Below, piece by piece: positions 6,123 to 63,606 of a stretch of DNA of 64,000 nucleotides. The stretch lies in the IMG/VR virus record IMGVR_UViG_3300010403_000705, positions 310,001 to 374,000 of that record; one strand, 5' to 3'. Position 1 is the stretch's first letter; every line of letters begins with the position of its first letter. Under the pieces are notes generated by a model that made no database searches, was not told the origin of the DNA, and worked only from the letters and a program-made list of their open reading frames with translations. The position numbers and the translations under genes were made by a program.

Positions 6123-6353
6123 TCAAATGCCGTGATAGTTGTTGAGGTTTTATCTTCCGTGCGACTTGCACAGCCGTGCCTGGGAAGCATGAAACTATCT
6201 TATGACATAACTGAAATGTTATGATGTTAATGATGGCAACATTCTAGAATGGAAGTTTATTCTTCTTTGTTTCTAGAAAACAGACCATTTTTATTATTGG
6301 CGATGTCTTCGTACCTCTGCCAACATAAGTCATCACACGGATAAAACATTTGA
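6123..6353 (+). ncRNA. Putative structured non-coding RNA upstream of the tRNA-Val-like gene
   Basis: ORF-free gap; closing helices TCAAATG/CATTTGA and CCGTG/CACGG; internal stems GATAGTT/AACTATC, CTTCC/GGAAG, TTCTAGAA pair, TTGGC/GCCAA. Confidence 0.45.
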
Positions 6354-6550
6354 ATTGATAGGTCTTCCCATCACTTTAGAATCGGTTCTTGCATCATATG
6401 ATGCGTTTCTTACGAAACAATAATTCATAGATAAAAATAGAATAATTACTAAATTGATGTATGTGAAGAATAGGGATAGAGTTCCAAGTTAATCTGGTAT
6501 ACTCTATACGCTTTGTATTTTGGTTAGTTACTTAATCATATTTTTATTAT

Positions 6551-6752
6551 GTACCTTTAGCTTAAAAGACAATACCGACGCATTATAATTCTTTGTATTT
6601 TCTCTGCAAAGAGACGTAGCATTTTAACCTCTCCCTCATAAGAGATAATGTTGAATGGTGACGTACATCGTTGATTATAGACTTCTGGTATTAGGACGAG
6701 CACCCTTCTAACACAAGGGAGGTTGAGGGTTCGAGCCCCTCAAGGTACACCA
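6551..6752 (+). tRNA. tRNA-Val(AAC) with ~125-nt structured insertion in the D-loop
   Basis: Acceptor GTACCTT/AAGGTAC, A73, encoded CCA; D stem GCTT/GAGC; anticodon arm CCCTT-CTAACAC-AAGGG; T arm GAGGG-TTCGAGC-CCCTC; the D-loop spans 6564-6697. Confidence 0.8.
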
Positions 6753-7121
6753 AATTGAAACGGAGAGACATTATGATTAGCGAACCAGGTAATGTTCATA
6801 CTGTGTTTTTGAAGTTACAATATTTTTTTCCAGATGATATTTGTATGGGCTGGCTGCATGCAGCCATAGAAGAATTTGATGCTAATGAAGATCTTATTAA
6901 GGACTTAATACATAAGATCAACCGTAAAGATTGGCCAGGAAAAATAGAGGCTAAGAAGTTTCTTCGCCACTTAAATGATGTCTTCTAAATCAGAGATGCT
7001 GCAAACTCTGAATTTTTAATTACTGAATACAATACATTTAATGGCAAGTGCATTCGCTGTAAAAATAAGTAGCTCTAGTCTGAGCTATGTTAACAAACAA
7101 CCAATAAGAAAGAGGAATTAG

Positions 7122-7448
7122 ATGGCAACGAAATTTATGTATCTGCGAGCAACACGTGATTCTCAACCTGTGGGATGTATGGCTTTTGATTCGGATGAGC
7201 GTGGTGTTCGATATCAAATTGCAGTTTTGAATCCAGTAGATACTTTTGATCGCACGAGAGGTCGAAGTATCGCAGAAGCGCGTCTACAAAAAAATCCCAT
7301 CAGAGTTGAGTTTCCAGAAGCTAGTGTTGTTGAGCTATCAAACTGGGATGTTCTCAGCACTTTGATGAGTCACCTAGCAGCCAGCAAGAGCGCCCCATCC
7401 CGAGCTGTACGAACTGCTCGCCATTGGCTAATTGCTCATACCAACTAA
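7122..7448 (+). CDS. Hypothetical protein
   Basis: ORF with GAGG RBS; DTFDRTRGRSIA motif of a kind seen in phage proteins. Confidence 0.55.
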   Translation: MATKFMYLRATRDSQPVGCMAFDSDERGVRYQIAVLNPVDTFDRTRGRSIAEARLQKNPIRVEFPEASVVELSNWDVLSTLMSHLAASKSAPSRAVRTARHWLIAHTN

Positions 7449-8015
7449 GATATGAAGAAGTATTTTTTAATTGGTGGCATACCATATAGGTCGTACACTG
7501 GTACTGGCACATTTGTTGGATTAAAAGTTGTTGGTCAGTATGATTCAATTGAAGAAGTAGAGACGGCGGTTAAGCTTCATTATGAAGAGTGTGGAGGTCT
7601 ATTAATGGTATTAGACTCTACTACTGGTCAAGAATTAGTTGAAAATTCTCAGGTATAGAAGAAAGGTTATATTTCATATGTCACATCATGGTGGTAAAGG
7701 ATATCCACATACCGCACAGATTCGGTCAGAGCGCCGCGATCGTGCTATTGCAGTTACCGCAGAAAGCGGGTATAGTAAATTAACGACTGAGGAAAAGTTG
7801 AAGCGAGTTCTTGCTTTTGTTTCCGTGCCTGGTAATGGTAAAGCAGAGAAGCAACTAGCGAAGCTTCAACTTCAATTGAAGAAAGACAAGGAACCAAAAC
7901 CTGTTAAAAACAAAGAAGTAGAAGCGCCGCTAGTAGTGTCTAAAAAGACGGATGATAATCATAACTATCAGGTCGAGCAAGCGTATAATAAGCGCAGTCA
8001 TAAGGTGCGTAAATA

Positions 8016-8282
8016 ATGCTATTCATGATTATTGAAACATTTAAAGGTGGTAACCCAAAACCTGTATATGAGAGATTTAAGCAGCGAGGGCGCCTTGCGC
8101 CTGAAGGCTTAACGTATGTCTCAAGTTGGGTGTCAGATAAGGGTACTGTGTGTTATCAAATCATGGAATGCGCAGACATTAATTTGATTCATCAATGGAT
8201 TGAAAAATGGAATGACCTGGTAGAATTCGAAGTCATCCCAGTAGTAACTTCTATTGAGGCGGCGAAACTTTTTTCTGCCTAG
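8016..8282 (+). CDS. DUF3303-family protein
   Basis: MLFMIIETFK...VYERF...GR..PEGL.YVSSWV...CYQIME...W.DLVEFEVIPV. Confidence 0.8.
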   Translation: MLFMIIETFKGGNPKPVYERFKQRGRLAPEGLTYVSSWVSDKGTVCYQIMECADINLIHQWIEKWNDLVEFEVIPVVTSIEAAKLFSA

Positions 8283-8314: not shown

Positions 8315-8548
8315 GCAATGCCATTGGGCGAGATGCTGATTGATGGTAATTACTTGGATTATCATCATCTGTGGCTTTGGGCTTTCTGTAACCGTCGATA
8401 CGGGTGAAGAAAGTATGGTAAACCCGCAAGGGACCGATCTGCATAAAAAAGTATAGTGGCGAGGCACGTTGTCGAGAATGTGTCATAAGAGGGTGCACTG
8501 TGCGCATCAGTTATATGACTGGATAATGATGATACCCATTAACATTGC
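8315..8548 (+). ncRNA. Putative structured non-coding RNA upstream of a tRNA-like gene
   Basis: Closing helix GCAATG..TGGG / CCCA..CATTGC; hairpins GATGGTAAT/ATTATCATC, CCC-GCAA-GGG (GNRA), CAGTTA/TGACTG; GC higher than flanks. Confidence 0.45.
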
Positions 8549-8569
8549 TTTTTTAGAGATACCAAGATA

Positions 8570-8761
8570 GCTCCGTTCGCTGAGCGGTGAAAGCTTCGGA
8601 AATATTGATGTATGTGTTTAAGTTCGATTCTGTGTAAGCGTTGATTGAATTCTGTCCAAAGGAATTCATGTCGCTGAATGGGTGGTTGTGGAGGAGAATA
8701 GAGTCGGCGCATCTGATATGTCCGGGGAACTAAGTGCAGAGTTTGATTCTCTGCCGGAGCC
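8570..8761 (+). ncRNA. tRNA-like RNA with a 120-nt structured domain replacing the anticodon loop
   Basis: Acceptor GCTCCG/CGGAGC; D arm GCT-GAGCGGTGAA-AGC; anticodon stem TCGGA(8596-8600)/TCCGG(8721-8725); T arm CAGAG-TTTGATT-CTCTG; ends C-CTA. Confidence 0.7.
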
Positions 8762-9429
8762 CTATTTGCTAAAAGAAATATAACATTTATGCATTTTGAA
8801 TATTTTGATCGTTACGCTTTATGTAAACTTTTCATTGAAAAAGAATCACCACATACATCCTATGAAAATATAGGATTTGTAATTAAAAGAGGTGAGAGTT
8901 TATTTGTAAGTCTAGCTCATGGTAGAAATAAAAATTCATTGGTAAGTTTAAGCGATCCTTCTTTTATTTCTGAAGGAAGGAAATTGGACCATGAAATTAT
9001 CCATGGTTGGGCTGTCCTTGTAAGTTAATGTTAATATGGAACCTACTTTTTGGTGGAACTATGATTTATTTCGAGTATCACAATCTTCAAGAAAACTAAT
9101 AGAGCAAGCAATTCTTGAAGGAACAATGAATTTAACTCACAATGTTAAACCAAAAATTGTGATGAATACATTCGAAGTTCTATATGATGTTGTGGTGCAT
9201 AAGAACGGAAGTCATCCTGGTTGGGTGAGTATCTCTTTGTTTAGATGTATGGAATGTAAATTATTCCTTAATCAACTTAAATGTTGGAGATGTTCTCAAA
9301 CTTCCCATCAATCTCACTCTTAATCATGGTATACATGTAAGACATGCAATAGTGATTCTAGCAAAATTCTGGCACGTATCGAATCAAATAATGACTCCTA
9401 AATTCGTGTGGTGGTCGCCCACGACGATA

Positions 9430-9582
9430 TGTGCCAAGAGCTACATAAAGTTTCTAAGCCGTGTGGGTTCGAATCCCACTCTATACTAGTGTGGTATAGA
9501 TGGCAGGAAAAATAAAAGGGAGACGCTAAGATCATGGTGATCTTTGGTACGAAACTGATGTAGCATATTAGGGAGAGGCACA
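9430..9582 (+). ncRNA. Circularly permuted tRNA-like RNA (Y RNA/YrlA-like architecture)
   Basis: Order is T arm (GTGGG-TTCGAAT-CCCAC), acceptor stem closed by a loop (TCTATAC-TAGTGTG-GTATAGA), D arm, anticodon-like hairpin; 5' and 3' ends pair (TGTGCC/GGCACA, GCTACAT/ATGTAGC, GTTTC/GAAAC, GCC/GGT). Confidence 0.75.
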
Positions 9583-9770
9583 ATGAATCATTATCACTTT
9601 GCTTCTCCCAAAATTTTATATAATAATTTATGATTAAATTATTACTGTATTTGATTGGTAGAAGTCCTATACTATCTTCATTGTGGATAACAGTATATTT
9701 TTTTCTACTAAAATTGCGCAGGAAAAACCGGATTCGATCAAAACGTGAATCCTTTACCAAGAATAAACAA

Positions 9771-10397
9771 ATGAGTAAATATCCTATTAGATATCTTCCT
9801 GTTCCAGTCCGCGAAGCATTTACCCATAAGTTGTTAGGTGATGGTTACGTTAATATTTTACCTTATCAAGTAAAAATTCGTGGAGAAAAAGTATATACCT
9901 ATTATTCTCCGCCTAAAAATAATTGTACTACTTTTGTAGTAGAAGTAAATTTAGAAACAAAAGAATGTATAGTTCACACAGGTGAATATGGCGGGCAATA
10001 CGCTGAGCGTCTTCCAGATCGAGATAAAAAACAGCGTCCACTTGATAAAGGAAAAGCTATTATTAAGGGATATGTAGTTTCTAGTGGAAGAGCGTCCAAT
10101 TATCTTGCAGATGTGGAAGTATTATTTCATCCATCTCAAACTTTGAAACCTCTTCCAGAAGTAAAAATTGATGAAAGAGAGCGTCGGATTTTGTTTTGTT
10201 TTGGATCTCTGAAAGAAGGATTAGCCAGGCGTGAAGCTCTTCATCGTTTAAATGTATCTAAACCAGAACTTGAAGTTCTAGTCAATAGAGGTCTACTGAA
10301 GAAGATTGGTAATAGTCATGGTTTGACTATGATTGCTGAAGCAAATCGTCTTCCTCGCCCTGTCCACGGCGAAAAAGTAATTGTTGATCAATGGTAA
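9771..10397 (+). CDS. Hypothetical protein, paralog of downstream ORF, possible C-terminal winged helix
   Basis: KYPIRYLP...YTYY...HP...DERERRILFCFGSLKEG aligned by eye with the 10437 ORF; ATG at 9771 preferred. Confidence 0.6.
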   Translation: MSKYPIRYLPVPVREAFTHKLLGDGYVNILPYQVKIRGEKVYTYYSPPKNNCTTFVVEVNLETKECIVHTGEYGGQYAERLPDRDKKQRPLDKGKAIIKGYVVSSGRASNYLADVEVLFHPSQTLKPLPEVKIDERERRILFCFGSLKEGLARREALHRLNVSKPELEVLVNRGLLKKIGNSHGLTMIAEANRLPRPVHGEKVIVDQW

Positions 10398-10436
10398 ATT
10401 ATAATAAATAGTGTATTGAGAAAAGTGTCATAGACA

Positions 10437-11093
10437 ATGAAATATCCTATTCTTAGACTGCCCAAGCCAATTGCAGCCGCTCTTGAGTCAGAAATGCTGC
10501 GACGTCGTTATCATATACCTCATACTATCTCGGTCACTCCCAGCACCTCATACACTTATTATATGAAAGGTAGATCCAATAAAATTGGATGTGTGATTGA
10601 AGTATCTTTGCTTCTAAAGAAAAAAATAGATCCTACTGTACAACAAGGTCGTTTGCAATTTGAGAAAAGAGGATATGTTTTGGATTATATGCCTCTGTGG
10701 GGAGGATGGAATGGAGATATATCCTCTCATATTGGAGCAGTTAATTCAGACAAAACTATACGTATTTTGAATCCTGGAAATGCGGTTATTAAGTGTTACG
10801 TTGATAACCAAACACTATTTGCGGGAGGTGAAGTAATATTGCATCCTACAGATATGCCGCCGGCAATCTCAGAAGTTAGATTGTCAGATCGTGAACGTCT
10901 TATTGTGTTTATTTTTGGCAAACTAAAAGCAGGACCTGAGAGATTTTTAACTTTAGAAAAATTTAAAGTTTCTCAAGAAGAAATCAATAATTTAGTCAAA
11001 AGAAAAGTTATCAAACCTACTAAAAATGGATATGTAATCACTGTTACAGGTTTGGCTGCTCGATCTGATAATCCTAAAATAGATAGATGGTAA
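10437..11093 (+). CDS. Hypothetical protein, paralog of upstream ORF
   Basis: KYPILRLP...YTYY...HP...SDRERLIVFIFGKLKAG; both end D-x-W. Confidence 0.6.
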   Translation: MKYPILRLPKPIAAALESEMLRRRYHIPHTISVTPSTSYTYYMKGRSNKIGCVIEVSLLLKKKIDPTVQQGRLQFEKRGYVLDYMPLWGGWNGDISSHIGAVNSDKTIRILNPGNAVIKCYVDNQTLFAGGEVILHPTDMPPAISEVRLSDRERLIVFIFGKLKAGPERFLTLEKFKVSQEEINNLVKRKVIKPTKNGYVITVTGLAARSDNPKIDRW

Positions 11094-13218: not shown

Positions 13219-13251
13219 TTTAAGTACCCGCTCTTGCTGTTCTTAATAAAG

Positions 13252-13559
13252 TTGGTGGCAGGTATTAGTTATTGTAAAGATGTTGGCATATGTAAACTAT
13301 AGCGCCGGCATTAAGCAATATGTTCGTGCGGTAACATACAGAAATTCTCTAGCTTTGAGAAAAACAATATAGTTACATTTAGCAGCCAGTAAACTCATGA
13401 CTTAGTTTATCAGTAATGCTAAGTGTTTAATCTAGGAGATGAAAGGGTATTTCTGTCTAGTCATATGTAAGAAGAAATGAGTCCAAAATAAAATACGTTG
13501 CATCAATTGAGATGATGATATTTAATATCATGCAGGTGCGATATTTGCCAACGTACCAA
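13252..13559 (+). ncRNA. Putative structured non-coding RNA abutting a tRNA-like gene
   Basis: ORF-free; closing helix TTGGT-GGCAGGTAT / ATATTTGCC..ACCAA; internal stems ATGTAA..CTATA/TATAGTTACAT, TATGTT/AACATA, TTCTC/GAGAA, TAAACT/AGTTTA. Confidence 0.45.
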
Positions 13560-13561
13560 AT

Positions 13562-13651
13562 GCCGAATTAGTACAATGAAAATGTCTATGCGCAAAGACT
13601 AAGTACGCCACTCATAAAGCGGTAATTTGGGTTTGATTCCCGAGTTCGGCT
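13562..13651 (+). tRNA. Aberrant tRNA-like gene with expanded D-loop; anticodon ambiguous (CTCATAA present, possibly Met/Ile2-derived)
   Basis: Acceptor GCCGAAT/GTTCGGC; D stem GTAC/GTAC with 28-nt loop containing a GTCT/AGAC hairpin; imperfect anticodon stem; T arm TTGGG-TTTGATT-CCCGA; ends T-CTA. Confidence 0.6.
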
Positions 13652-15350: not shown

Positions 15351-16286
15351 ATGAAATACATTACAACTGCAAGTATCAGTGGTTTTTCTTTTGATGTTGG
15401 ATCTGATTGGCATTTGCCACCTGATAGATTAGAAGTTTTGAATTCTTTCCCTGATCATATTAAGTCACAACAAGGATCAGATATTTTATTCTGTGTGGGA
15501 GATGTAATCGAAACCTCTGATGGTCTTAATTCAAGCGCCCATATTAGTAAACTACTTGATGGTTTATCTGACTTATATAAGGTTATTATTTTTACTCCAG
15601 GCAATCATGATCTGCGTGGTAGAAATAATCCTTGGTCCGACTTTGCTAATTTGCCAAAAAACGTGTATACCACATCAACTAACAGCTATGGATATCGTGT
15701 CTTAGATCTTTATGATCTGCACAAAGATCTTCCAAATTTGCGCATTTTGGTTGCTGATCTTTTCTATGATATGAAATTTTTAAATCCATCCATTTTAGAT
15801 ATTTCTGATGGTGAATTGATTGCACAATATCGTGAGTCGAATGATGGCAAGCACTTTCTTAATGGAGATATTGCAAATTTCAGTCATATGGCGCATCATG
15901 TTCGTGTCCGTTTGGATTCGTCTATTGATATGTTAGTAACGCACTCATTACCTCATCCTTCTTTGGTTACATTTAGAGTAGCTCAAATAACTGAAGAAAT
16001 TGAAGAAAAACAGAAGATTTTGGGCATTCCGTTTATTTGTGATCCTGATCATGATACACAAGAAGCTTCACGTTGGAACAGTACGCCAGAGCGTTATAGG
16101 CAATGGTGGAATATCAAATCTTTTTTCATGGGTAGTGATGTATTAAGCACTACTAATTTCAAGGATGGTTTGATTTGTGTTTATGGGCACAATCATCGAA
16201 GTAATCAATCACCAGCTATTATTAATAATAAGAAGGTGCATTTTGTTTCTCACCAGCCCTGTCCTTGGAAAACTAATTATCAATGA
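15351..16286 (+). CDS. Calcineurin-like metallophosphoesterase
   Basis: SDWH, GD, PGNHD, THS, GHNH motifs. Confidence 0.8.
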   Translation: MKYITTASISGFSFDVGSDWHLPPDRLEVLNSFPDHIKSQQGSDILFCVGDVIETSDGLNSSAHISKLLDGLSDLYKVIIFTPGNHDLRGRNNPWSDFANLPKNVYTTSTNSYGYRVLDLYDLHKDLPNLRILVADLFYDMKFLNPSILDISDGELIAQYRESNDGKHFLNGDIANFSHMAHHVRVRLDSSIDMLVTHSLPHPSLVTFRVAQITEEIEEKQKILGIPFICDPDHDTQEASRWNSTPERYRQWWNIKSFFMGSDVLSTTNFKDGLICVYGHNHRSNQSPAIINNKKVHFVSHQPCPWKTNYQ

Positions 16287-18309: not shown

Positions 18310-19293
18310 ATGGATAGGCGTGAATATAATGTTGTTTGTAGATTCTCTAATGGTCGTCTTCATAATGAACTATGGACGTTTGAAGGACTAGAAGATAAAA
18401 GTACACAAGCAATAAGAGAATGTCTATCCATCTATGAAAAATATGATCCTCAAGATGTTCCTATTGTCTTAGGTGTAGAATGCCTTCCAAGCAGGGATTT
18501 AAATATTGATTTTCAACTTCTAAAAGATATGTCATATATCCGATCAATTTGTGATTTGGGTAGAAAAATTAGAGCTACTAATAATCTAGCAGTTAGACAG
18601 CCATTAAGTGTAGGTTATGTATATTTTTCAGATTATGCTACACGCTCTAGTTGTCAGTCTAGAAGATATATAAGAGAAATGGGTGATCTTATTGAAAAAG
18701 AATTGAACATTAATGAAATCATTTTTATTAATGATGTAGGTGATAATTCTTTATTTGATGTCATCTTAAAACCAAATTTCCGATCTTTGGGTCCTAAAGG
18801 ATATGGTAAATTAGCACAACCCGTAAAAAAGTTAATGGAACAACTTCCAACGTTTATGAGTAATAGTTTATATGAAAGACTATTACTAGGACCTATTAAT
18901 GACTTTGGTTTTCCTATTTCTCTAGAAGATGTAGAAGTAGGTCTCAAACCTAAGGAAGGCTTAAAATCATTGTCCAATGATTGTGGTGCTATCATTCTGG
19001 ATACTAGAATCTCTCCTCTCATGAAAAGAAAAGGATTGGTTTATAATGTGAAATCTTGCATTCAACAATGTAGGCGTGCTTTAAATCTTGACCTACAAGA
19101 TTATGTGAATATGACTTTATATTCTAGAGACGCAGATCTTGTATTTGGTGTAGAAGAATTCTCACATTTCCTTAAAAATGAATGTTTAATTGATGTTTTA
19201 AATTGTTATGATCAACCAAATGTTTTAAATTTAATGGATGATTCAAGTTCTTTTGTTTTTGATACATTCTGCATTCATATGAAAAGGATTTAA
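18310..19293 (+). CDS. Stand-alone C-terminal region of type-2 isoleucyl-tRNA synthetase (no catalytic domain)
   Basis: LGRKIR...AVRQPL, ELNINEI, LKPNFRSLGPK.YGK, LDT.I...G....S.IQ..RR..L...D; no HIGH or KMSKS. Confidence 0.75.
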   Translation: MDRREYNVVCRFSNGRLHNELWTFEGLEDKSTQAIRECLSIYEKYDPQDVPIVLGVECLPSRDLNIDFQLLKDMSYIRSICDLGRKIRATNNLAVRQPLSVGYVYFSDYATRSSCQSRRYIREMGDLIEKELNINEIIFINDVGDNSLFDVILKPNFRSLGPKGYGKLAQPVKKLMEQLPTFMSNSLYERLLLGPINDFGFPISLEDVEVGLKPKEGLKSLSNDCGAIILDTRISPLMKRKGLVYNVKSCIQQCRRALNLDLQDYVNMTLYSRDADLVFGVEEFSHFLKNECLIDVLNCYDQPNVLNLMDDSSSFVFDTFCIHMKRI

Positions 19294-28306: not shown

Positions 28307-28354
28307 GCTGGAGTATAAAGATTTTTCAAGAGCCTTAGACTCTTGAAGCAGACT

Positions 28355-28645: not shown

Positions 28646-28675
28646 TGAATTAATGTGTATTAGTTAAGTTTATAG

Positions 28676-28748
28676 AGTAGAATATTGTATCGGTAGCATA
28701 ACTTGGTTTAAATCCAGGAAAGTACAGGTTCAATTCCTGTTTCTACTT
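28676..28748 (+). tRNA. Atypical tRNA-like gene, anticodon TAA, short variable loop
   Basis: Acceptor AGTAGAA/TTCTACT; anticodon arm CTTGG-TTTAAAT-CCAGG; T arm ACAGG-TTCAATT-CCTGT; weak D stem; no CCA. Confidence 0.6.
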
Positions 28749-52562: not shown

Positions 52563-52644
52563 GGGCGTGTGGGTTGATTACAAATTGGCATAGTATACGG
52601 ACTTAAAATCCGCACCTTTGAGGGTTCGAATCCCTCCATGCCTA
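52563..52644 (+). tRNA. Atypical tRNA-Leu(TAA)
   Basis: Acceptor GGGCGTG/CATGCCT, A73; D arm TAC-AAATTGGCATA-GTA; loop CTTAAAA; T arm GAGGG-TTCGAAT-CCCTC; about 7 extra nt before the D stem; short variable region. Confidence 0.7.
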
Positions 52645-53021
52645 CCTGATAATGGTAAAGACAAGAAAGTAATGTTTCAATGTAAGCATAGTAAGACTGG
52701 TCCTTGTTATGAGTGTGTGAGCGAAAAAAATCATTATGCGGATCTCAATGCTGAGAAAAAGCAGAGAGAAGATGAACAAGAATATTATCGAAGTTGTTGC
52801 GATAGTTCACAAATTATGCATTATGAAATTAATAGAGCTGGTCGCCTTGCTTGCGGTTATTCTTGGGACGAGGTACGTAAACATAATGAGAAATTTACCA
52901 GCGATTCTTTTATATTTGAAGATCGAGTTCGCAGTAAAATAGCTTGTGAACAATGTGCAAAATATTTTCTTAAATTGAAAAAAAGGATATGATAGCTCAA
53001 TAAACTATCAATTTAATAAAA

Positions 53022-54557
53022 ATGTCTAAAATAGAATGGACAATAGATCGAAAAAATGATTCCTGTTGCCGGATTAATAATTCTCTAGGTATAGATATTG
53101 ATCTTTTTGCAAATGATGATGTGGTTATTGATAGAGATGCCTTTCAAGAACTTTTTGATTTCTTAGATGTGCAACGCGCAATTTCTGATATTTCTTCTGC
53201 AGAAAAATCAGGAAATTTTTCTTTTTTTGGAAACCCTAATGCTGGAATTACTAAAGTTGTTTTAACTCCTGATTTTCACAAAGGCTCTGGTATTCCTATT
53301 GGAACAGTGGTGGAGAATAATGGTTTTGTTATTCCAGCAGCCATTGGAAATGATATTTGTTGTGGAATGAGATTATTAGTAACAGATATGCCAGTAACTA
53401 AATTAGAAAATCATTGGGGAACTATTCAAAAACGTTTGAGAGAAATCTTCTTTCAAGGACAACGAAACATTCCTATGTCTCCACGACAAAGAGAATCTGT
53501 TCTTCGTTATGGGTTACCAGGATTATTAGAAACCATTAAAGACAATGAAAATACAGGTATTTATCAACATTTTAATGTTAAAAATCAAATAGCTGATCTA
53601 GCCAGAGCTCATAATAATGGTGGATTTAATACCGACAGATTGTTTGGTTTTGATAAGTTGATACGCAGTTCTGGAGCCATTGACGGTAGAGATCCACAAA
53701 TTGGTTCAGTAGGCGGTGGTAATCATTTTGTAGAGTTTCAAAAAATCGAAGAAATTTTGTGTAAACAAACTGCCAGAGAAATGAATATTAACAGTGGTAA
53801 CCTAGCTATTATGATTCATTCTGGATCTGTTAGTTTAGGACACGCAGTTGGCTGGCATTTTATTGATCGTGCAAGAGAACTCTTTCCGTCTCAAATAAAA
53901 AGTCCAAAAAATAATTTCTTTGTTCTACCTACAGTTGGACCATATGCTAAAGAAGGCAAATTTTATCTAAATAGTATGAGAAATGCAGCGAATTTTGCTT
54001 TTGCTAATAGGTTATTTTTAGGTCTTATGGCGATCAAAGCCGTACAAGAAGCAATTGGTTGTTATGTAGATTCCAGACTTATTTATGACGCTCCTCATAA
54101 TTTAGTTTTTGAAAAGAATGATGGTCAATTTATACACCGTAAAGGCGCTACACCCGCAGAAGGTCCAGACAAAGTAGACCAATGGATTGGAAAACCAGTT
54201 ATTATTCCTGGGTCAATGGGCAGTGCTAGTTATTTGCTAACTGGATTAGGCAATCCAGAAGCCTTAGAAAGCGCATGTCACGGTGCAGGACGATTAATGC
54301 CTCGCGGAGTAGCCTCTCATGTAGATGATAAGATTTTTGATGATCAGACATGTGATTTGCGTATTGTGACTGCTGTAGATCCAAAATCGCCTCAAATGCA
54401 AATGAGAAAAGATATTATGATTAAATATAAAGAGAGAGTTAAAGAAGAAGCACCTTATGCTTATAAACCAATTACACCAATTATTCGATCTATTGAAGAT
54501 GCACACATTGCTAGAGTAGTAGCTAAGCTAATGCCATTGTGCACGGTAAAAGGATAG
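53022..54557 (+). CDS. rtcB: RtcB family RNA ligase
   Basis: PDFHKG.GIPIG, GNDICCG, GSVGGGNHFVE, HSGS, HN, HRKGA, PGSMG, HGAGR, EEAP.AYK. Confidence 0.95.
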   Translation: MSKIEWTIDRKNDSCCRINNSLGIDIDLFANDDVVIDRDAFQELFDFLDVQRAISDISSAEKSGNFSFFGNPNAGITKVVLTPDFHKGSGIPIGTVVENNGFVIPAAIGNDICCGMRLLVTDMPVTKLENHWGTIQKRLREIFFQGQRNIPMSPRQRESVLRYGLPGLLETIKDNENTGIYQHFNVKNQIADLARAHNNGGFNTDRLFGFDKLIRSSGAIDGRDPQIGSVGGGNHFVEFQKIEEILCKQTAREMNINSGNLAIMIHSGSVSLGHAVGWHFIDRARELFPSQIKSPKNNFFVLPTVGPYAKEGKFYLNSMRNAANFAFANRLFLGLMAIKAVQEAIGCYVDSRLIYDAPHNLVFEKNDGQFIHRKGATPAEGPDKVDQWIGKPVIIPGSMGSASYLLTGLGNPEALESACHGAGRLMPRGVASHVDDKIFDDQTCDLRIVTAVDPKSPQMQMRKDIMIKYKERVKEEAPYAYKPITPIIRSIEDAHIARVVAKLMPLCTVKG

Positions 54558-58402: not shown

Positions 58403-59170
58403 ATGATAATAATGGATAAAATAGTCATTGCTATTGGAGATATACATGGTTGTATTGAAGAGTTTCAAGAGTTATTGAAAACTATTCAATATAATAAAGA
58501 AAAAATGCGTGTTGTTTTATTAGGCGATCTATTAGATAGAGGTCCTGATTCTGTTGGCTGTATCAGACTAGCGCGTCAGTTAAAACTTGAATCTATTAGG
58601 GGTAACCATGAAGATACACATTTAAGGTGGCGTCGACATGAACAAAAGCGCAAAGATTTAGGTAAGCCTAATCCAATGAGTAAATTATCTTATAATAAGC
58701 AAATTGTTCAGGAAACTTTATCTGAAGAAGATATTGAATGGATAAATAATCTTCCACTAAGACTAGAACTTTATAAGAATTTATGGGCAGTACATGGTGG
58801 CTGCAGTCCTAGATTTAAATTATCAGAACAACCATCTAACCAAATTATTAGATTAAGATATGTAGACGATAAAGGGATACCACAATCGCTAGGAGAAAAT
58901 TTTTCTCAACCACCTAATACTAAATATTGGGCAGAAGTCTGGCAAGGTCCCGAATCTATTGTTTATGGTCACTGTGTTCATGATCTAAAAAATCCTAGAA
59001 TAGATGATCATGGCAGATATAAATGTATAGGCATTGACACAGGATGCGTTTTCGGTGGAATGTTAACTGCCGCTATATTCAATGTATCAAATAACAATAA
59101 CTTTGACATTGAATTTGTACAGATTGCCGCTAAGACTAAATATTATAATTTGTCTAATAAAAAAGAATAA
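58403..59170 (+). CDS. PPP/ApaH-like metallophosphoesterase
   Basis: GDIHGC, GDLLDRGPDS, GNHE, VHGG, YGH, IDTGC.FGG.LTA. Confidence 0.9.
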   Translation: MIIMDKIVIAIGDIHGCIEEFQELLKTIQYNKEKMRVVLLGDLLDRGPDSVGCIRLARQLKLESIRGNHEDTHLRWRRHEQKRKDLGKPNPMSKLSYNKQIVQETLSEEDIEWINNLPLRLELYKNLWAVHGGCSPRFKLSEQPSNQIIRLRYVDDKGIPQSLGENFSQPPNTKYWAEVWQGPESIVYGHCVHDLKNPRIDDHGRYKCIGIDTGCVFGGMLTAAIFNVSNNNNFDIEFVQIAAKTKYYNLSNKKE

Positions 59171-59214: not shown

Positions 59215-60060
59215 ATGTGTATTTCAATTTCACCATCTACAATGTCTGATACACTAATTTATGTAGGAGAATCGCATAGATTAGGACGAGACATTCATGT
59301 TTTGGCATATCAAAATATTGCTATAAATGAATCCTCGACACCTAATGCTATGATCATTCCTTTTCCAACTAGTCAAACTATGACTGAAGAAAATATTATA
59401 AATACTACTACCTTTAAAAATTTTTTAAAAGATATTAGTAATGCGACAAAATCTACTAGGAGATTGACGCTAGGTGGACCTGTCTGCGCCACATTACCAA
59501 CCTGTCAAGCAAAAGTATTTGATATAGGTTCTTATACAGTGGTATTAGCGTCACATGTCAAATATGTGCCAGAAGCTTTATTAAAAGTACCAAAACATAA
59601 AAGACCAGATATTCCAATTAGATTTCTGTTCCAATATGGTAAATTATATGGGCATAAACCAATAGCTGTTTGCTGTTGGGATGGTCAAATTGAAGCAGAA
59701 CCTCTTCTATGGTGGTATGAGCCAATCAACAATAAATCTTTGTTTATTCCCACTATGGACGCTCACGATGGTAACCCTCCTAATATAGATGCAATTGTGA
59801 AAATGGATCATATTATTTCAGCAGGCTCATCTAATGTACCAAATGGTATTTCAGTTAAATATACAGATAGTATTCCAGAAAAGATAGCGGAAATTTTGCC
59901 AACTAAAGTTCATGGGACTAAGATGGATTATCAAATCAAAAATGGAGATAGTTTTATTGATTTAGATTTGGTAAGAAATAAGAGGTATGGTGCTCATATA
60001 ACACGTGGCATTAATTTAGAAAACTCTTATAAAGTTGATAGCATGTATGGTTGGTCATAA
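59215..60060 (+). CDS. Hypothetical protein
   Basis: MC start, YQN, NAMIIPFP, DAHDG; function not recognised. Confidence 0.55.
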   Translation: MCISISPSTMSDTLIYVGESHRLGRDIHVLAYQNIAINESSTPNAMIIPFPTSQTMTEENIINTTTFKNFLKDISNATKSTRRLTLGGPVCATLPTCQAKVFDIGSYTVVLASHVKYVPEALLKVPKHKRPDIPIRFLFQYGKLYGHKPIAVCCWDGQIEAEPLLWWYEPINNKSLFIPTMDAHDGNPPNIDAIVKMDHIISAGSSNVPNGISVKYTDSIPEKIAEILPTKVHGTKMDYQIKNGDSFIDLDLVRNKRYGAHITRGINLENSYKVDSMYGWS

Positions 60061-60566
60061 TGAATAAGATAATTTTTTTAGATATTGATGGAGTGTTAAA
60101 TAGTGATATCTATTTTAATAGCCCTGCTTTTAAAGAAGAATCCAAAGGTATGTCCTGGGAAGAAATCATGTTAATTGCTCATCATACCCATCTTGATCCA
60201 GTAGCAATACACATATTTAATCAATTAGTAAATAGATCTAAAGCTGAGGTAGTATTATCATCTACATGGAGATTGAAATACTCTATAGAAGCATTAAATA
60301 ATATGCTTAAAGATCGTGGAGCTACTTTTCAAATTAATGCCGTCACACCTAAACATCCTGAATATATAGGTTGGAGTTCTTTTCCAATTCCTCGCGGAAT
60401 AGAAATTCAAGCATATTTAAATTCACTTGATCAAAAACCGGAATCATTTGTTATTTTGGATGATGTAGATAACATGGTTCATTTAATTAATTATCTAATT
60501 TTAGTAGATGACTATTATGGACTGACAACTGAAAACGTAGAAATGGCTTTAAATATTTTAGGATAA
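60060..60566 (+). CDS. HAD-superfamily phosphatase (Swiss-Army-Knife RNA-repair-like HAD)
   Basis: FLDIDGVLN, VVLSSTWR, RG.EI..YL, FVILDD, GLT. Confidence 0.8.
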   Translation: MNKIIFLDIDGVLNSDIYFNSPAFKEESKGMSWEEIMLIAHHTHLDPVAIHIFNQLVNRSKAEVVLSSTWRLKYSIEALNNMLKDRGATFQINAVTPKHPEYIGWSSFPIPRGIEIQAYLNSLDQKPESFVILDDVDNMVHLINYLILVDDYYGLTTENVEMALNILG

Positions 60567-62298: not shown

Positions 62299-62315
62299 GG
62301 AAAGTTAATCTTAAA

Positions 62316-62672
62316 ATGAAACCATATCAACATGCAAAAAATTCTGCTCGTAAACATGGCGGTGTTCCTGAGGATTATCAAAAAATTCATGATTTTATTG
62401 ATAGTTCTAAAGCCGCCATGCCTGATATGAGGCACCGCGCACAGTTACATTCAGCATTTGGAATTTTTCTAGTAGAACAAGTATTTGGAACTACACTTAC
62501 TAACTCTGATGGAAAAAAAGTCTGTATTAGGGATCTTGCTGAAGATCATGTAATTGAAGATCTTGGATTCATTCCAACTATGGAACAGTGGTTTGGTAAT
62601 ATGAAGATGCAAAATTGGATGTTTGGTGGACGCCGCAATGTCAATAAAATAAAAGTTATTAAAATAGATTAG
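62316..62672 (+). CDS. DUF6915-like protein
   Basis: P..HA..SARK.GG.PEDY..IH.F.DSSK, RHR...H..FGI, AE.HV.EDLG.IPT. Confidence 0.65.
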   Translation: MKPYQHAKNSARKHGGVPEDYQKIHDFIDSSKAAMPDMRHRAQLHSAFGIFLVEQVFGTTLTNSDGKKVCIRDLAEDHVIEDLGFIPTMEQWFGNMKMQNWMFGGRRNVNKIKVIKID

Positions 62673-62690
62673 GAGCATCAGGATTAAAAT

Positions 62691-63179
62691 ATGAGTAATA
62701 ATGGATTCGATAAAATTACTGAAATGAAAAAACGTTTGCAAGAGACTATAAAGAATGATGGAATAAAAATTCTAAAAGAAGAAGTAGACCGTATTTTAGA
62801 AATTTTACCAGAGGTGGAATGTATCTTATGGGGACAAAATAATAATGTATATAATGATGAATCTTATGAGTTTAGAATGTTTGGGATAGATTTTTTACCT
62901 TCTACGACATGTTCATGGTATACTAATTTTATTAAAAGTCTAGAAAACGATCATGGATCCATAAAAAATGCTGTACATTTTCATGGGGAAACTTTAGAAC
63001 ATCTACATTCTCTTTCAAAAAATATTTCGCAACATCGTGATAGAATGTTATTTATTTACGACACACTTTCCTCTTTTGGTAAAAGTATTCCAGAAGAAGT
63101 TCTTCAAGTTCTCGGAAATGTAACGGTCCGAATAGATAGAAAAAACTTCTCAACCCAAGAATATGATTGTGGATATTAG
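62691..63179 (+). CDS. Hypothetical protein
   Basis: W.Q....YND motif; related to the downstream ORF fragment. Confidence 0.5.
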   Translation: MSNNGFDKITEMKKRLQETIKNDGIKILKEEVDRILEILPEVECILWGQNNNVYNDESYEFRMFGIDFLPSTTCSWYTNFIKSLENDHGSIKNAVHFHGETLEHLHSLSKNISQHRDRMLFIYDTLSSFGKSIPEEVLQVLGNVTVRIDRKNFSTQEYDCGY

Positions 63180-63522
63180 CCCATGTGTATTTGAAGTAAA
63201 TGATTTTTATGTAACATTTAAAAACTCTGATAGTGAAGATGAGGATGACTTATATTCTTTAGCTAGGTCTAAAGATCCGGTGAAGAAAAAAATTGGCCAG
63301 GCTGTTGAAGCTTTAAGTAAAGAATTGCCGGATGATGTATTAGAAGCTGTTTTTGGTGATCATTGTGATGTAGTTGCTACACCAGATAAATTTTCTGTAA
63401 CAGAATGTGAGCACGATTAAGAAATCTTGATATATAAAAGCTTGGGATAGGTTATTAGTAAATGTAAATATTTCCCCTCCTTTTCTATTTACATTTATAG
63501 ATGCCAGTAATTTATCCCATCT

Positions 63523-63606
63523 GGGCAGGTGGCGAAACTGGTAGACGCAGCGTGCTTAAAACTCGCCGGATTAATCTCCGTAAGGGTTCGAATCCCTTCT
63601 TGCCCA
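63523..63606 (+). tRNA. tRNA-Leu(TAA)
   Basis: GGGCAGG/CTTGCCC, A73; D arm GCG-AAACTGGTAGA-CGC; loop CTTAAAA; long V arm CGGA/TCCG; T arm AAGGG-TTCGAAT-CCCTT; CCA not encoded. Confidence 0.9.

What the first reader, a model, noticed from the sequence alone, without database searches (positions are those of the whole stretch)
6123..63606. Candidate phage system of expanded/rearranged tRNA-scaffold RNAs plus RNA ligation and end-healing enzymes
Seen: of seven tRNA-like elements only one (63523) is canonical. Most of the others carry an expansion in a different part of the cloverleaf: D-loop (6551, 13562), anticodon loop (8570), variable-arm exit with circular permutation (9430), and acceptor-D connector (52563). 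The one at 28676 has a weak D arm and a short V loop. The stems stay paired, with compensatory or G-U pairs, which argues against simple decay. The window also encodes RtcB (53022), an Rnl2-type ligase (22675), a HAD RNA-repair-like phosphatase (60060), two metallophosphoesterases, a P-loop kinase, a putative nucleotidyltransferase (27386) and a stand-alone IleRS C-terminal module (18310). Established: RtcB joins 2',3'-cyclic-P to 5'-OH ends, and phage Rnl/Pnk systems repair tRNAs cut by anticodon nucleases. Inference: the phage either matures intron-bearing or permuted tRNAs by a protein-dependent splicing route, or uses tRNA scaffolds as nuclease-resistant decoys or carriers of extra RNA domains.
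Basis: partly seen in the sequence, partly recalled or inferred. Interest (0 to 1): 0.92.

Follow-up and report, generated by a model that had tools for sequence, protein, structure and literature searches.

The report
Expanded tRNA-derived RNAs in huge phage
A 433-kb phage carries, besides two ordinary tRNAs, a conserved set of tRNA-derived RNAs with extra pieces inserted at different places, plus large structured RNAs next to them; relatives keep their folds, so they are functional genes rather than decayed tRNAs, but nothing shows they are spliced by the nearby RNA-repair enzymes.

Summary
The core observation holds. A strict T-arm plus acceptor-stem search finds seven elements, all on the + strand and all intergenic, against 0.4 expected by chance. 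Only 28676 and 63523 pass ARAGORN and Rfam. Related huge-phage contigs show three kinds.

1. **Variant decoders.** A (6551-6752) is a tRNA-Val with a ~125-nt D-loop insert. Its homolog L042:8260-8491 has the same insertion site, a Val anticodon (CAC versus AAC) and compensatory stem changes, but a divergent insert. E (52563-52646) is a tRNA-Leu with 7-9 extra bases between G9 and the D stem and no long variable arm. Three phages share this form, all with Leu anticodons and A73.
2. **Scaffold RNAs.** In B (8570-8761) a conserved structured domain of about 100 nt on a lengthened stem replaces the anticodon loop. C (~9363-9615) is a small RNA with a T arm followed by a closed acceptor-like hairpin. 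It is not a permuted tRNA.
3. **Large conserved structured RNAs** lie just upstream: B-up and D-up.

D has no homolog. RtcB, an RNA ligase, a HAD domain and two metallophosphoesterases are confirmed. The kinase and nucleotidyltransferase are not. No splice motif, group I intron or splicing endonuclease was found. None of the new RNAs matches Rfam.

The parts
6551..6752 (+). Element A: tRNA-Val(AAC)-like gene with a ~125-nt insertion in the D-loop (the D-loop with its insert spans 6564-6697). Layout: acceptor 6551-6557 / 6742-6748; D stem 6560-6563 / 6698-6701; anticodon arm 6703-6719 (anticodon 6710-6712); T arm 6725-6741; A73 at 6749; encoded CCA 6750-6752.
   Evidence: Read from sequence. 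The MFE fold gives a cloverleaf with a closed insert. Rfam tRNA scores only 21.6 bits. Homolog L042:8260-8491 has the same insertion site, compensatory changes in the acceptor and D stems, anticodon CAC and A73. Deleting the insert gives an ARAGORN tRNA-Val call.
6083..6550 (+). A-up: a 468-nt stretch upstream of A with no ORF of 50 aa or more. Nature unknown.
   Evidence: ORF list. No Rfam hit. No detectable similarity to the matching gap L042:7760-8259.
8361..8568 (+). B-up: conserved structured RNA domain of ~200 nt ending 1-5 nt before element B.
   Evidence: About 72% nucleotide identity with L022, L023, L024, L039 and L042, although the flanking proteins are only ~50% identical. Consensus fold has 52 pairs, 10 of them compensatory, from three sequences. 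No Rfam hit.
8570..8761 (+). Element B: tRNA-scaffold RNA. Acceptor is 8570-8576 / 8754-8760, with a conserved U7-C66 mismatch. It has a class-II-like D arm and a T arm at 8737-8753. The anticodon loop is replaced by a 17-bp extended stem carrying a three-way-junction domain of about 100 nt with invariant motifs.
   Evidence: Six-sequence alignment A11: 47 pairs, 23-24 compensatory versus 1-4 in slid controls. Deleting the insert does not restore a tRNA. Invariant G-U pairs fix the strand as +.
9363..9615 (+). Element C: stand-alone small RNA. In order: 5' strand pairing with a 3' GGGAG; a covarying hairpin with a GG-containing loop; T arm 9463-9479; closed acceptor-like hairpin 9480-9500; invariant single-stranded motifs; a covarying hairpin; a GC-rich terminator-like hairpin at ~9571-9609.
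   Evidence: 75-80% identity with L022, L023, L024 and L039, partial with L041. 43 pairs, 14 compensatory versus 1-3 in controls. The small ORF is not conserved. L042 has the C 5' half followed by an open-acceptor tRNA-like element instead.
13219..13561 (+). D-up: conserved ~340-nt stretch directly upstream of element D with no + strand ORF of 50 aa or more.
   Evidence: Aligns over its full length with L022:5024-5430, 71% column identity. L022 keeps D-up but lacks D.
13562..13651 (+). Element D: tRNA-like, with a ~17-nt extra hairpin in the D-loop and an irregular anticodon stem. Status uncertain; it may be degenerate.
   Evidence: No homolog found. After deleting the hairpin ARAGORN calls 'Tyr(AUA)' in 51 of 252 variants.
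28676..28748 (+). tRNA with anticodon UAA but class-I shape (short variable loop, weak D stem, U73). It is preceded by a 370-nt stretch with no + strand ORF of 50 aa or more.
   Evidence: ARAGORN and Rfam 49.6 bits; sequence.
52563..52646 (+). Element E: variant tRNA-Leu(UAA). It has 7 extra nt between U8-G9 and a 3-bp D stem, a normal Leu-type D-loop, a short (5-6 nt) variable loop instead of the long arm, A73, and a G1-U72 pair. It lies about 375 nt upstream of RtcB.
   Evidence: Rfam tRNA-Sec 31.3 bits, below threshold. Same architecture in L005:9901-9985 (anticodon CAA) and L043:14155-14237 (UAA, 83% identity), with covariation at 3:70 and in the D stem. Deleting 5-10 nt restores ARAGORN Leu calls. 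L002 has an ordinary class-II tRNA-Leu(UAA) at the syntenic site.
63523..63606 (+). Canonical class-II tRNA-Leu(UAA).
   Evidence: ARAGORN; Rfam 52.2 bits.
53022..54557 (+). RtcB RNA ligase (joins 3'-phosphate or 2',3'-cyclic-phosphate ends to 5'-OH ends).
   Evidence: Pfam PF01139, E 3.4e-90, near full-length match. Orthologs at 57-81% identity in five other phage contigs.
22675..23664 (+). ATP-dependent RNA ligase family protein.
   Evidence: Pfam PF09414 RNA_ligase, E 1.1e-14. No PDB sequence match.
60051..60566 (+). HAD phosphatase domain of the 'Swiss Army Knife' RNA-repair type.
   Evidence: Pfam PF18143 HAD_SAK_2, E 4e-26.
58403..59170 (+). Calcineurin-like metallophosphoesterase. A second one lies at 15351-16286.
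   Evidence: Pfam PF00149, E 5e-17 and 7e-07.
18310..19293 (+). Protein with a DUF5915 domain. From memory, this domain is found at the C-terminus of some isoleucyl-tRNA synthetases.
   Evidence: Pfam PF19302, E 1.2e-18. No PHROG hit.
9630..11093 (+). Two paralogous genes (9630-10397 and 10437-11093) that lie next to this RNA cluster in seven related contigs; element C is directly upstream in four of them. Each is predicted as a beta-rich N-terminal part plus a C-terminal winged-helix-like domain. Function unknown.
   Evidence: Homologs and synteny. AlphaFold2 pLDDT 86.8. No whole-fold PDB match; the C-terminal ~65 aa resembles winged-helix proteins, probability ~0.85.

Best explanation
The window holds part of the tRNA-gene region of a 433-kb phage in which tRNA genes have diversified into a family of tRNA-derived RNA genes. 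The part that stays constant is the acceptor stem plus the T arm. From textbook knowledge, this is what RNase P, RNase Z, the CCA-adding enzyme and the T-loop modification enzymes recognise. The D region, the anticodon region and the variable region have been opened to insertions.

Three outcomes coexist.

1. **Variant tRNAs that still decode.** E is a tRNA-Leu whose long variable arm is replaced by a short loop plus a 7-9-nt connector insert. The first three bases of that insert can pair with the first three bases of the variable loop. A is a tRNA-Val carrying a self-contained domain in the D-loop.
2. **Non-decoding scaffold RNAs (B, C).** Here the tRNA module gives defined ends and stability to an attached conserved RNA domain.
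3. **Large structured RNAs (B-up, D-up)** transcribed just upstream. A tRNA-like element at their 3' side would release them by RNase P cleavage and would also set the 5' end of the next mRNA, 20-40 nt downstream.

RtcB, the RNA ligase, the HAD phosphatase and the metallophosphoesterases are most likely the usual phage answer to host nucleases that cut tRNAs. They are not a dedicated splicing machine.

**Shown:** the elements, their conservation, covariation, strand, and conservation of anticodon identity.

**Inferred:** processing by RNase P/Z, aminoacylation of A and E, and the role of the repair enzymes.
For: - **The elements are real.** Seven T-arm plus acceptor modules against 0.4 expected, all on the + strand and intergenic.
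- **Folds are conserved.** Cross-phage conservation exceeds that of neighbouring proteins, and many compensatory pairs exist for B, B-up and C.
- **Anticodon meaning is conserved.** A and E keep the amino acid of the anticodon (Val AAC/CAC; Leu UAA/CAA/UAA) and A73. UUA is 40% of Leu codons and GUU 37% of Val codons.
- **Inserts are discrete.** Deleting the insert restores default ARAGORN calls for A and E but not for B.
- **B's insert is functional.** It has invariant motifs and covarying helices.
- **Nearly every tRNA-like element sits directly 5' of an ORF**, at 21-103 nt.
- **Most sit directly 3' of a conserved or long stretch without ORFs**.
- **The arrangement recurs.** L042 shows the C 5' half followed by an ordinary open tRNA-like element, so 'structured RNA followed by tRNA' is repeated.
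- **Relatives carry other expansions**, including ~170 nt at the variable-arm position in L005:14813-15056.
- **A precedent exists.** tRNA-like processing signals are known in plant mitochondria as t-elements (PMC1920247).
Against: - There are no expression, end-mapping or aminoacylation data.
- Families have only 2-6 sequences, and structures came from RNAalifold on the same alignments, so covariation counts are partly circular.
- The strong sequence conservation of B's insert and of C's single-stranded motifs means they do more than act as processing handles, and that function is unknown.
- A 125-nt domain at the tRNA elbow may be incompatible with the ribosome.
- L042's copy of A lacks an obvious G18-G19 near the insert boundaries.
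- D has no homolog.
- Only 64 kb of the 433-kb genome could be inspected for partner proteins.
Confidence: 0.5

Rival explanations
1. The inserts are introns. Precursor tRNAs, at least A and possibly B and D, are cut by a phage or host endonuclease that leaves a 2',3'-cyclic phosphate and a 5'-OH, and the exons are joined by the phage RtcB. This would be an archaeal/eukaryal-type tRNA splicing pathway in a bacteriophage.
For: RtcB is intact, and a tRNA-Leu gene lies beside it in three phages. A's insert is poorly conserved in sequence and differs in length between the two homologs, while the exons are conserved, as expected for an intron. Removing it leaves a good tRNA-Val. HAD and metallophosphoesterase end-healing candidates are present.
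Against: No bulge-helix-bulge motif occurs above chance or at homologous positions in A, B, D or the L005 element. There is no group I intron or self-cleaving ribozyme hit in permissive Rfam searches. No tRNA-splicing endonuclease domain appears in the ~50 proteins scanned. B's insert is conserved as a structured domain on a 17-bp covarying stem and leaves no anticodon loop. E's insert is only 7-9 nt. RtcB is common in large phages without any splicing role (recalled from PMC7824862, which I did not read in detail).
Confidence: 0.12
2. The expanded elements are decoys or hardened substitutes. They mimic the parts of tRNA recognised by host anticodon nucleases or other tRNA-targeting defence toxins and soak them up. 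Alternatively, their altered cores let them escape cleavage while still decoding.
For: The elements keep tRNA recognition modules while changing regions near typical cleavage sites. RNA-repair genes in the same window point to pressure from tRNA-cutting defences. From memory, phage tRNAs that evade tRNA-targeting defences are documented; no such paper was read here. E-type tRNA-Leu coexists with an ordinary tRNA-Leu(UAA) in the same genome.
Against: No host nuclease is identified. Decoy function does not explain the invariant motifs inside B's insert, the non-tRNA domains B-up and D-up, or C's closed acceptor hairpin. A decoy for an anticodon nuclease should keep an anticodon loop, which B and C lack.
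Confidence: 0.18
3. The odd elements are tRNA pseudogenes that have picked up random insertions and are decaying.
For: D has an irregular anticodon stem and no homolog, and L022 keeps the upstream RNA but has no D. L002 has an ordinary tRNA-Leu where the window has E. L004 carries an orphan tRNA 3' fragment.
Against: A, B, C and E are each found in 2-6 divergent phages with the same insertion site and compensatory stem changes, and are more conserved than neighbouring proteins.
Confidence: 0.05
4. B-up, C and D-up are cis-acting leaders (riboswitch-like or protein-binding 5' UTRs) that control the downstream genes, and the tRNA-like parts are sensors or binding sites.
For: In C an SD-like GGGAG is paired with an upstream CUCCU in the consensus fold. 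The elements lie directly upstream of ORFs. A conserved pair of winged-helix-like proteins lies next to the cluster in seven contigs.
Against: C is followed by a strong terminator-like hairpin before the next gene in all homologs, and the start codon after the GGGAG is not conserved. B-up is followed by a tRNA-like element, not by an ORF. No riboswitch family matched.
Confidence: 0.1

Closest known systems
YrlA-type bacterial Y RNAs (tRNA mimics bound by Ro60/Rsr, often encoded with RtcB; also found in phages) - PMC4201824
   Same: A T arm is followed directly by a closed acceptor-like stem-loop, as in element C. Both are non-decoding tRNA mimicry, and both occur in a genome region that also encodes RtcB.
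   Different: In YrlA a D arm follows the acceptor-like stem. In C a GG-loop hairpin lies 5' of the T arm instead. No Ro-binding motif was recognised, no TROVE/Ro60 gene is in the window, and no Rfam hit appeared. C is not adjacent to RtcB; it lies 43 kb away.
tmRNA tRNA-like domain with its long P2 helix
   Same: B has an acceptor stem, a D-analog, a T arm and a long covarying helix in place of the anticodon arm that leads to an extra domain.
   Different: ARAGORN finds no tmRNA. B has no G3-U70 pair. The apparent short reading frame in B's insert is conserved at the nucleotide level, not the peptide level. The extra domain is only about 100 nt and has no pseudoknot series.
Archaeal tRNA genes with non-canonical introns, split or permuted tRNAs, joined by RtcB
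   Same: Insertions occur at non-anticodon positions, including the D-loop (A, D), and RtcB is present.
   Different: No bulge-helix-bulge motif, no splicing endonuclease found, and a bacterial-virus context (LysM, phiEco32-type ligases). C is not a permuted tRNA.
Bacterial tRNA genes interrupted by group I introns (e.g. cyanobacterial tRNA-Leu(UAA); from memory)
   Same: The same anticodon family (Leu UAA) is involved, and B's insertion is at the anticodon loop.
   Different: No Rfam group I hit. The inserts of ~100-130 nt are shorter than group I introns as I recall them. The Leu(UAA) genes here have no anticodon-loop insert.
Phage T4 tRNA-cluster small RNAs RNAC and RNAD (function still unknown, PMC9697503) and T4 Pnkp/Rnl1 tRNA repair (from memory)
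   Same: In both cases a phage encodes extra stable small RNAs of unknown function. From memory, the T4 RNAs also sit in its tRNA gene region, and T4 carries its own RNA end-healing and sealing enzymes.
   Different: No sequence relation was tested or seen. The RNAs here are larger, more numerous and built on recognisable tRNA scaffolds with inserts. The sealing enzyme here is RtcB plus a PF09414-family ligase.
Plant mitochondrial t-elements (PMC1920247) and the mascRNA / MALAT1 arrangement (from memory)
   Same: Degenerate tRNA-like structures sit between transcripts and act as RNase P / RNase Z cleavage signals. This matches the position of A, B, D and E: directly 5' of ORFs, and in most cases (A, B, D) 3' of long stretches without ORFs.
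   Different: Processing is not demonstrated here. A and E keep intact anticodon arms with conserved identity, and B carries a conserved extra domain. Both go beyond a simple cleavage signal.
GOLLD and ROOL large RNAs (phage-associated, often next to tRNAs; from memory)
   Same: Large, ornate, conserved structured RNAs sit in phage genomes adjacent to tRNA genes (B-up, D-up).
   Different: No Rfam match to GOLLD, ROOL or any other family. They are also smaller, ~200 and ~340 nt.

Membership tests
Canonical tRNA (Rfam RF00005 / ARAGORN default) | Scores at or above the Rfam gathering score (29 bits) or is called by ARAGORN at default settings | tested here: not met
   Met only by 28676 (49.6 bits) and 63523 (52.2 bits). 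A scores 21.6 bits. E scores 31.3 bits on tRNA-Sec, whose threshold is 47. B, C and D give nothing.
Canonical tRNA (Rfam RF00005 / ARAGORN default) | 7-bp acceptor stem continuous with a 5-bp T stem and a T-loop of TTCRANY type | tested here: met
   All seven elements. In C the acceptor-like stem is closed by a loop.
Canonical tRNA (Rfam RF00005 / ARAGORN default) | 5-bp anticodon stem with a 7-nt loop carrying U33, and an anticodon whose meaning is conserved among homologs | tested here: met
   Met for A (AAC / CAC, both Val) and E (UAA / CAA / UAA, all Leu). Not met for B and C. Irregular in D.
Intron-containing tRNA of the archaeal/eukaryal (endonuclease plus RtcB) type | Bulge-helix-bulge (or relaxed) motif at both exon-intron junctions | tested here: not met
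   The BHB scan gives hits at shuffle level, and none at homologous positions in window A versus L042 A or among the B homologs.
Intron-containing tRNA of the archaeal/eukaryal (endonuclease plus RtcB) type | A tRNA-splicing endonuclease encoded by the phage or its host | tested here: inconclusive
   None among the ~50 window proteins scanned with Pfam or PHROGs. The other ~370 kb of the genome and the host are not visible.
Intron-containing tRNA of the archaeal/eukaryal (endonuclease plus RtcB) type | RtcB-type ligase present | tested here: met
   PF01139, E 3.4e-90.
Group I intron in a tRNA gene | Match to the group I intron covariance model; insertion in the anticodon loop | tested here: not met
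   No Rfam hit at E up to 10. Only B is inserted at the anticodon loop, and its insert is about 130 nt including the stem extension.
Circularly permuted tRNA gene | 3' half (T arm, 3' acceptor strand) followed by a linker and then the 5' half (5' acceptor strand, D arm, anticodon 5' strand) | tested here: not met
   In C the closed hairpin is followed by invariant single-stranded motifs and other hairpins, with no D arm or anticodon half.
tmRNA | ARAGORN tmRNA call; G3-U70 alanine identity pair; conserved tag reading frame | tested here: not met
   No tmRNA was called. Position 3:70 in B is U-A, C-G or A-U. The apparent frame is not conserved as a peptide.
YrlA / bacterial Y RNA | Order T arm, then closed acceptor-like stem, then D arm, inside a terminal stem that carries the Ro-binding motif; encoded next to Ro60/Rsr | tested here: not met
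   The T arm plus closed stem is present in C. However, the GG-loop hairpin is 5' of the T arm, no Ro60/TROVE hit was found in the window, and there is no Rfam hit.
Phage/bacterial RNA repair gene set (RtcB, ATP-dependent RNA ligase, end-healing phosphatases) | Presence of the enzyme families | tested here: met
   RtcB, PF09414 RNA ligase, HAD_SAK_2 and two Metallophos proteins. A polynucleotide kinase was not found.
Phage/bacterial RNA repair gene set (RtcB, ATP-dependent RNA ligase, end-healing phosphatases) | Genes organised as one operon or neighbourhood with their RNA substrate | tested here: inconclusive
   The enzymes lie at 15, 23, 53, 58 and 60 kb. Only tRNA-Leu / E is next to RtcB, and this is conserved in three phages.
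GOLLD / ROOL and other Rfam large RNAs | Match to the family covariance model | tested here: not met
   No hit in the window or in L022, L023 or L042.

The most novel reading that the evidence does not exclude
Huge phages use tRNAs that stay expanded while they work. On this reading A enters the ribosome as a ~200-nt Val-tRNA with an extra domain on its elbow, and E is a re-engineered Leu-tRNA in which a helix between the 9/10 connector and the variable loop replaces the long variable arm. Alternatively, A's insert is removed by an endonuclease-plus-RtcB pathway, which would be the first archaeal/eukaryal-style tRNA splicing found in a bacterial virus. In either case B, C, B-up and D-up would be new classes of phage RNA machines built on tRNA parts.
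Probability: 0.15. Interest if true: 0.9.

Novelty: new variant of a known kind. Interest (0 to 1): 0.7.

Why it matters
tRNA-like RNAs and intron-bearing tRNAs are known kinds, but these particular forms are not in Rfam 15:
- a tRNA-Val with a large D-loop domain;
- a tRNA-Leu that trades its long variable arm for a connector insert;
- a tRNA scaffold with a conserved domain in place of the anticodon loop;
- the adjacent ~200-340-nt structured RNAs.

The E-type signature was absent from 185,579 reference prokaryotic genomes, and the E and B signatures tried occurred in IMG/VR only in the contigs already in hand.

They are under clear selection across phages whose proteins are only ~50% identical. 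They therefore define testable new RNA genes in huge phages. They bear on three open questions:
- how far the tRNA fold can be altered and still decode;
- how phages process and stabilise non-coding RNAs;
- what phage RtcB acts on.

For annotation, standard tRNA finders miss five of the seven elements here and several more in the relatives.

Tried and rejected
- **Known RNA families.** Rfam at gathering and permissive thresholds on the window, on the intergenic stretches alone, and on relatives gave only the two tRNAs plus sub-threshold tRNA-like hits.
- **ARAGORN with introns or lowered thresholds.** This produced dozens of obvious false positives and is not informative.
- **RNase P RNA idea for B-up.** It came from motif resemblance recalled from memory. 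I rejected it because there is no Rfam hit, and the supposed P4 strand forms a local covarying stem.
- **tmRNA or small-ORF idea for B.** The frame is not conserved as a peptide.
- **Leader-peptide idea for C.** The start codon is not conserved, whereas the hairpin is.
- **Bulge-helix-bulge splice motif.** Hits are at chance level.
- **Promoter and terminator scan.** Counts equal the shuffle expectation.
- **Phage GenBank DNA search.** No match.
- **Single-protein locus searches with 9630-10397 and 3805-4827.** They found only the source contig.
- **Motif scans.** The B-insert motif in IMG/VR and in JGI metagenomes gave only chance matches besides the source phage. One IMG/VR scan was wasted on a mistyped B-up motif, and the corrected motif found only the source contig. 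The E signature in reference genomes gave only chance hits.
- **Protein 5771-6082.** No homologs.
- **Fold search of the neighbouring 255-aa protein family.** No whole-fold match.
- **PDB sequence searches for 59215, 54843 and 22675.** Nothing found.
- **A-up.** No detectable similarity to the matching gap in L042.

Full report
**Source and context.** The window is bases 310,001-374,000 of IMGVR_UViG_3300010403_000705, a 432,844-bp viral contig. GC content is 30-41%, and nearly all long ORFs are on the + strand. No DNA match exists in 50,697 GenBank phage records. Protein content is that of a huge bacteriophage:
- phiEco32-type COOH-NH2 ligases, an amidoligase with LysM, GGACT and a glutamine amidotransferase;
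- PRPP synthetase, a cytidylyltransferase-like protein, peptide deformylase, UDG and a radical SAM protein;
- the RNA-end enzymes discussed below.

**Checking the observation.** ARAGORN and Rfam at curated thresholds find only two tRNAs, 28676-28748 and 63523-63606, both with anticodon UAA. I then searched for the least variable part of a tRNA. The pattern was a 5-bp stem closed by G-C, a TTYRA-type 7-nt loop, and a 7-nt 3' strand that pairs with a 7-mer up to 400 nt upstream. All are on the + strand, none on the - strand, and all are intergenic. Block shuffles give 0.375 on average and at most 3. Reading the sequences confirms the insert positions:
- D-loop in 6551 (A) and 13562 (D);
- anticodon-loop position in 8570 (B);
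- the connector between position 9 and the D stem in 52563 (E).

Lowering ARAGORN thresholds or allowing introns only produces noise. Two corrections apply. 28676 is canonical enough to pass both tools. 9430 (C) is not a permuted tRNA.

**Relatives.** RtcB brought in five other phage contigs at 57-81% identity. Homologs of two window proteins led to further relatives from Logan assemblies and one NCBI metagenome assembly: L022, L023, L024, L038-L041 and L042-L044. In these, the same intergenic positions hold T-arm elements that ARAGORN misses. Nucleotide BLAST shows that window 8361-8781 and 9363-9555 are 67-80% identical to these contigs, although the neighbouring proteins are only about 45-56% identical. 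None of these RNAs matches any Rfam family in the window or the relatives.

**Element E (52563-52646).** Three phages share one architecture. The features are:
- an acceptor stem with G1-U72;
- U8-G9, then 7-9 extra bases beginning GG;
- a 3-bp D stem that covaries (UAC/GUA versus UGC/GCA);
- a normal Leu-type D-loop with GG;
- a normal anticodon arm;
- a short NCCUU-type variable loop instead of the long arm;
- a normal T arm, and A73.

Pair 3:70 is G-C, A-U or U-A. The anticodons are UAA, CAA and UAA, all leucine. The first three inserted bases (GGU, GGA, GGU) can pair with the first three bases of the variable loop (ACC, UCC, ACC). That is one compensatory event. I read this as a short helix sitting where the long variable arm would emerge, but this is an inference from three sequences. 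Deleting 5-10 nt at the connector restores default ARAGORN tRNA-Leu calls in about 80% of variants.

In the window and in L005 the element lies just upstream of RtcB. In L002, whose RtcB is 81% identical, the same site holds an ordinary class-II tRNA-Leu(UAA). The E signature occurs in only two IMG/VR contigs and in none of 185,579 reference genomes. UUA is the commonest Leu codon in the window at 40%. I conclude that E is a working tRNA-Leu variant, not a pseudogene.

**Element A (6551-6752).** From position 22 onward it is a textbook tRNA: D-stem 3' strand, anticodon arm with loop CUAACAC, 5-nt variable loop, T arm, acceptor, A73 and an encoded CCA. The 5' acceptor strand, positions 8-9 and the D-stem 5' strand lie 134 nt further upstream. 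L042:8260-8491 has the same layout at the syntenic place, after the GGACT gene. Comparing the two:
- acceptor pairs 2:71 and 3:70 change from U-A and A-U to C-G and C-G;
- the D stem changes with pairing kept;
- the anticodon loop is CUCACAC (CAC, also Val), and A73 is kept;
- the insert differs in length (about 125 versus 155 nt) and aligns poorly.

Deleting the insert restores ARAGORN tRNA-Val calls in both. So the tRNA frame is under selection and the insertion is old. Whether the insert stays in the mature RNA cannot be told from sequence.

**Element B (8570-8761) and B-up (8361-8568).** B has an acceptor stem with a conserved U7-C66 mismatch, a class-II-like D arm and a T arm. Where the anticodon loop should be, the stem continues for 17 covarying base pairs into a three-way junction. 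That junction carries invariant 10-11-nt motifs. With six sequences, 23-24 of 47 predicted pairs show compensatory change, against 1-4 when the 3' partners are slid by 1-3 columns. Several invariant G-U pairs fix the transcript strand as +. No deletion restores a sensible tRNA. From memory, the D-arm and T-stem sequences resemble bacterial tRNA-Ser; I did not test this.

Directly upstream, separated by about five bases, lies B-up. It is a ~200-nt domain with its own closing helix, a GNRA-capped hairpin and long-range pairs, and it also covaries.

**Element C (~9363-9615).** Five to six homologs share the following, in order:
- a 5' CUCCU that pairs with a 3' GGGAG;
- a covarying hairpin with a GG-containing loop;
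- the T arm;
- immediately after it, a 7-bp hairpin whose sequence differs in every phage but always pairs;
- two invariant single-stranded motifs;
- another covarying hairpin;
- a strong GC-rich hairpin 40-60 nt further on that looks like a terminator.

The ATG inside the hairpin loop is not conserved, so there is no leader peptide. In L042 the 5' half of C is followed instead by an open-acceptor tRNA-like element ending ACCA. This suggests C arose from a 'structured RNA plus tRNA' pair. The T arm followed by a closed acceptor-like stem recalls YrlA Y RNAs (PMC4201824). However, the order of the arms differs, no Ro60 gene is in the window, and there is no Rfam hit.

**Element D (13562-13651) and D-up (13219-13561).** D has a good acceptor and T arm, a 4-bp D stem with an extra hairpin in its loop, and a poor anticodon stem. 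I found no homolog. D-up aligns over its full length with L022 at 71%, but L022 has no D. D may be degenerate. D-up is a conserved stretch without a + strand ORF of 50 aa or more, and its function is unknown.

**Enzymes.** Confirmed are RtcB, a PF09414 RNA ligase, a HAD_SAK_2 domain, two metallophosphoesterases and a DUF5915 protein. The proposed kinase and nucleotidyltransferase are not confirmed. The genes are spread from 15 to 60 kb and are not one operon.

**Splicing or not.**
- A scan for bulge-helix-bulge motifs gives chance-level hits, none at homologous positions.
- No group I intron or self-cleaving ribozyme is detected.
- No splicing endonuclease domain was found in the window.
- B's insert is a conserved structured domain.

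Splicing therefore has no positive support. It remains open only for A.

**Best reading.** This is a diversified family of tRNA-derived RNA genes. The acceptor/T-arm module is kept in all of them. The likely reason is that it recruits RNase P, RNase Z, CCA addition and T-loop modification, and so gives defined, stable ends. The other arms have been used as insertion points. A and E still look like decoders. B and C are scaffold RNAs with other, unknown functions. B-up and D-up would be released by cleavage at the tRNA-like element that follows them, which would also set the 5' end of the next mRNA. Plant mitochondrial t-elements work this way (PMC1920247). T4's RNAC and RNAD are an older, still unexplained example of extra small RNAs encoded by a phage (PMC9697503). 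The repair enzymes most likely protect the tRNA pool from host nucleases. I put this reading at about 0.5. The alternatives are decoy function at 0.18, splicing at 0.12, cis-regulatory leaders at 0.10, and simple decay at 0.05 (D only).

**Limits.**
- Families have 2-6 members.
- Structures come from RNAalifold on the same alignments used for counting.
- There are no expression data.
- Only 15% of the genome was visible.

Noticed in passing
L002:4773-4846 and L006:16911-16985: Related huge phages carry tRNAs with anticodon CUA, which ARAGORN labels 'Pyl'. These are amber suppressors, hinting at TAG recoding in the clade. In the window, 10 of the 49 long ORFs tallied end in TAG, and no recoding is evident.
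   Followed up: partly
L005:14813-15056: A tRNA-like element with a 7-bp acceptor and T arm ending ACCA, carrying about 170 nt at the variable-arm position. ARAGORN and Rfam both miss it. It is a fourth kind of expansion site in this phage group.
   Followed up: partly
L022:816-1100 and L023:1700-1990: Another conserved structured-looking stretch with no called gene sits between B and C in two relatives; the two copies share 46-52-nt blocks at 79-89% identity. In L023 it is followed by a tRNA-like element at 1995-2070. No counterpart was found in the window.
   Followed up: partly
L022:1381-1490; L023:38-108 and 1102-1185; L042:4170-4245: More non-canonical T-arm/acceptor elements occur in the relatives. 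Examples are a ~58-nt expanded anticodon/variable region in L022, and an odd anticodon loop in L023 that ARAGORN reports as 'cc'. All but L023:38-108 are missed by ARAGORN.
   Followed up: no
L004:16602-16628: An orphan tRNA-Leu-type T arm and 3' acceptor ending ACCA has no 5' half within 3 kb. A 163-aa ORF on the opposite strand lies just upstream. This may be a disrupted tRNA or a remnant of a mobile-element insertion.
   Followed up: partly
window 28307-28675: A 370-nt AT-rich stretch with no + strand ORF of 50 aa or more lies directly upstream of the class-I tRNA(UAA) at 28676, repeating the 'long ORF-free stretch followed by tRNA' arrangement. No homolog was found in the loci held.
   Followed up: partly
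window 9630-11093: Two paralogous genes (25-30% identical to each other) lie next to the RNA cluster in seven contigs. The AlphaFold2 model is confident (pLDDT 86.8). It has no PDB fold match for the whole protein, but the C-terminal part is winged-helix-like.
   Followed up: yes
window 889-4827, 29605-32674, 34338-35717: A concentration of peptide-ligase-type genes: three or four COOH-NH2 ligase-like proteins, an amidoligase fused to LysM, GGACT, and a glutamine amidotransferase. Part of this set is syntenic in L042.
   Followed up: no
window 39769-40761 and 56745-57947: A PRPP synthetase and a cytidylyltransferase-like protein (NMNAT-like). Together they may form a phage nucleotide or NAD salvage module.
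   Followed up: no
window 52674-52992: A small Cys-rich ORF lies between element E and RtcB. L002 also has a small ORF between its tRNA-Leu and RtcB.
   Followed up: no
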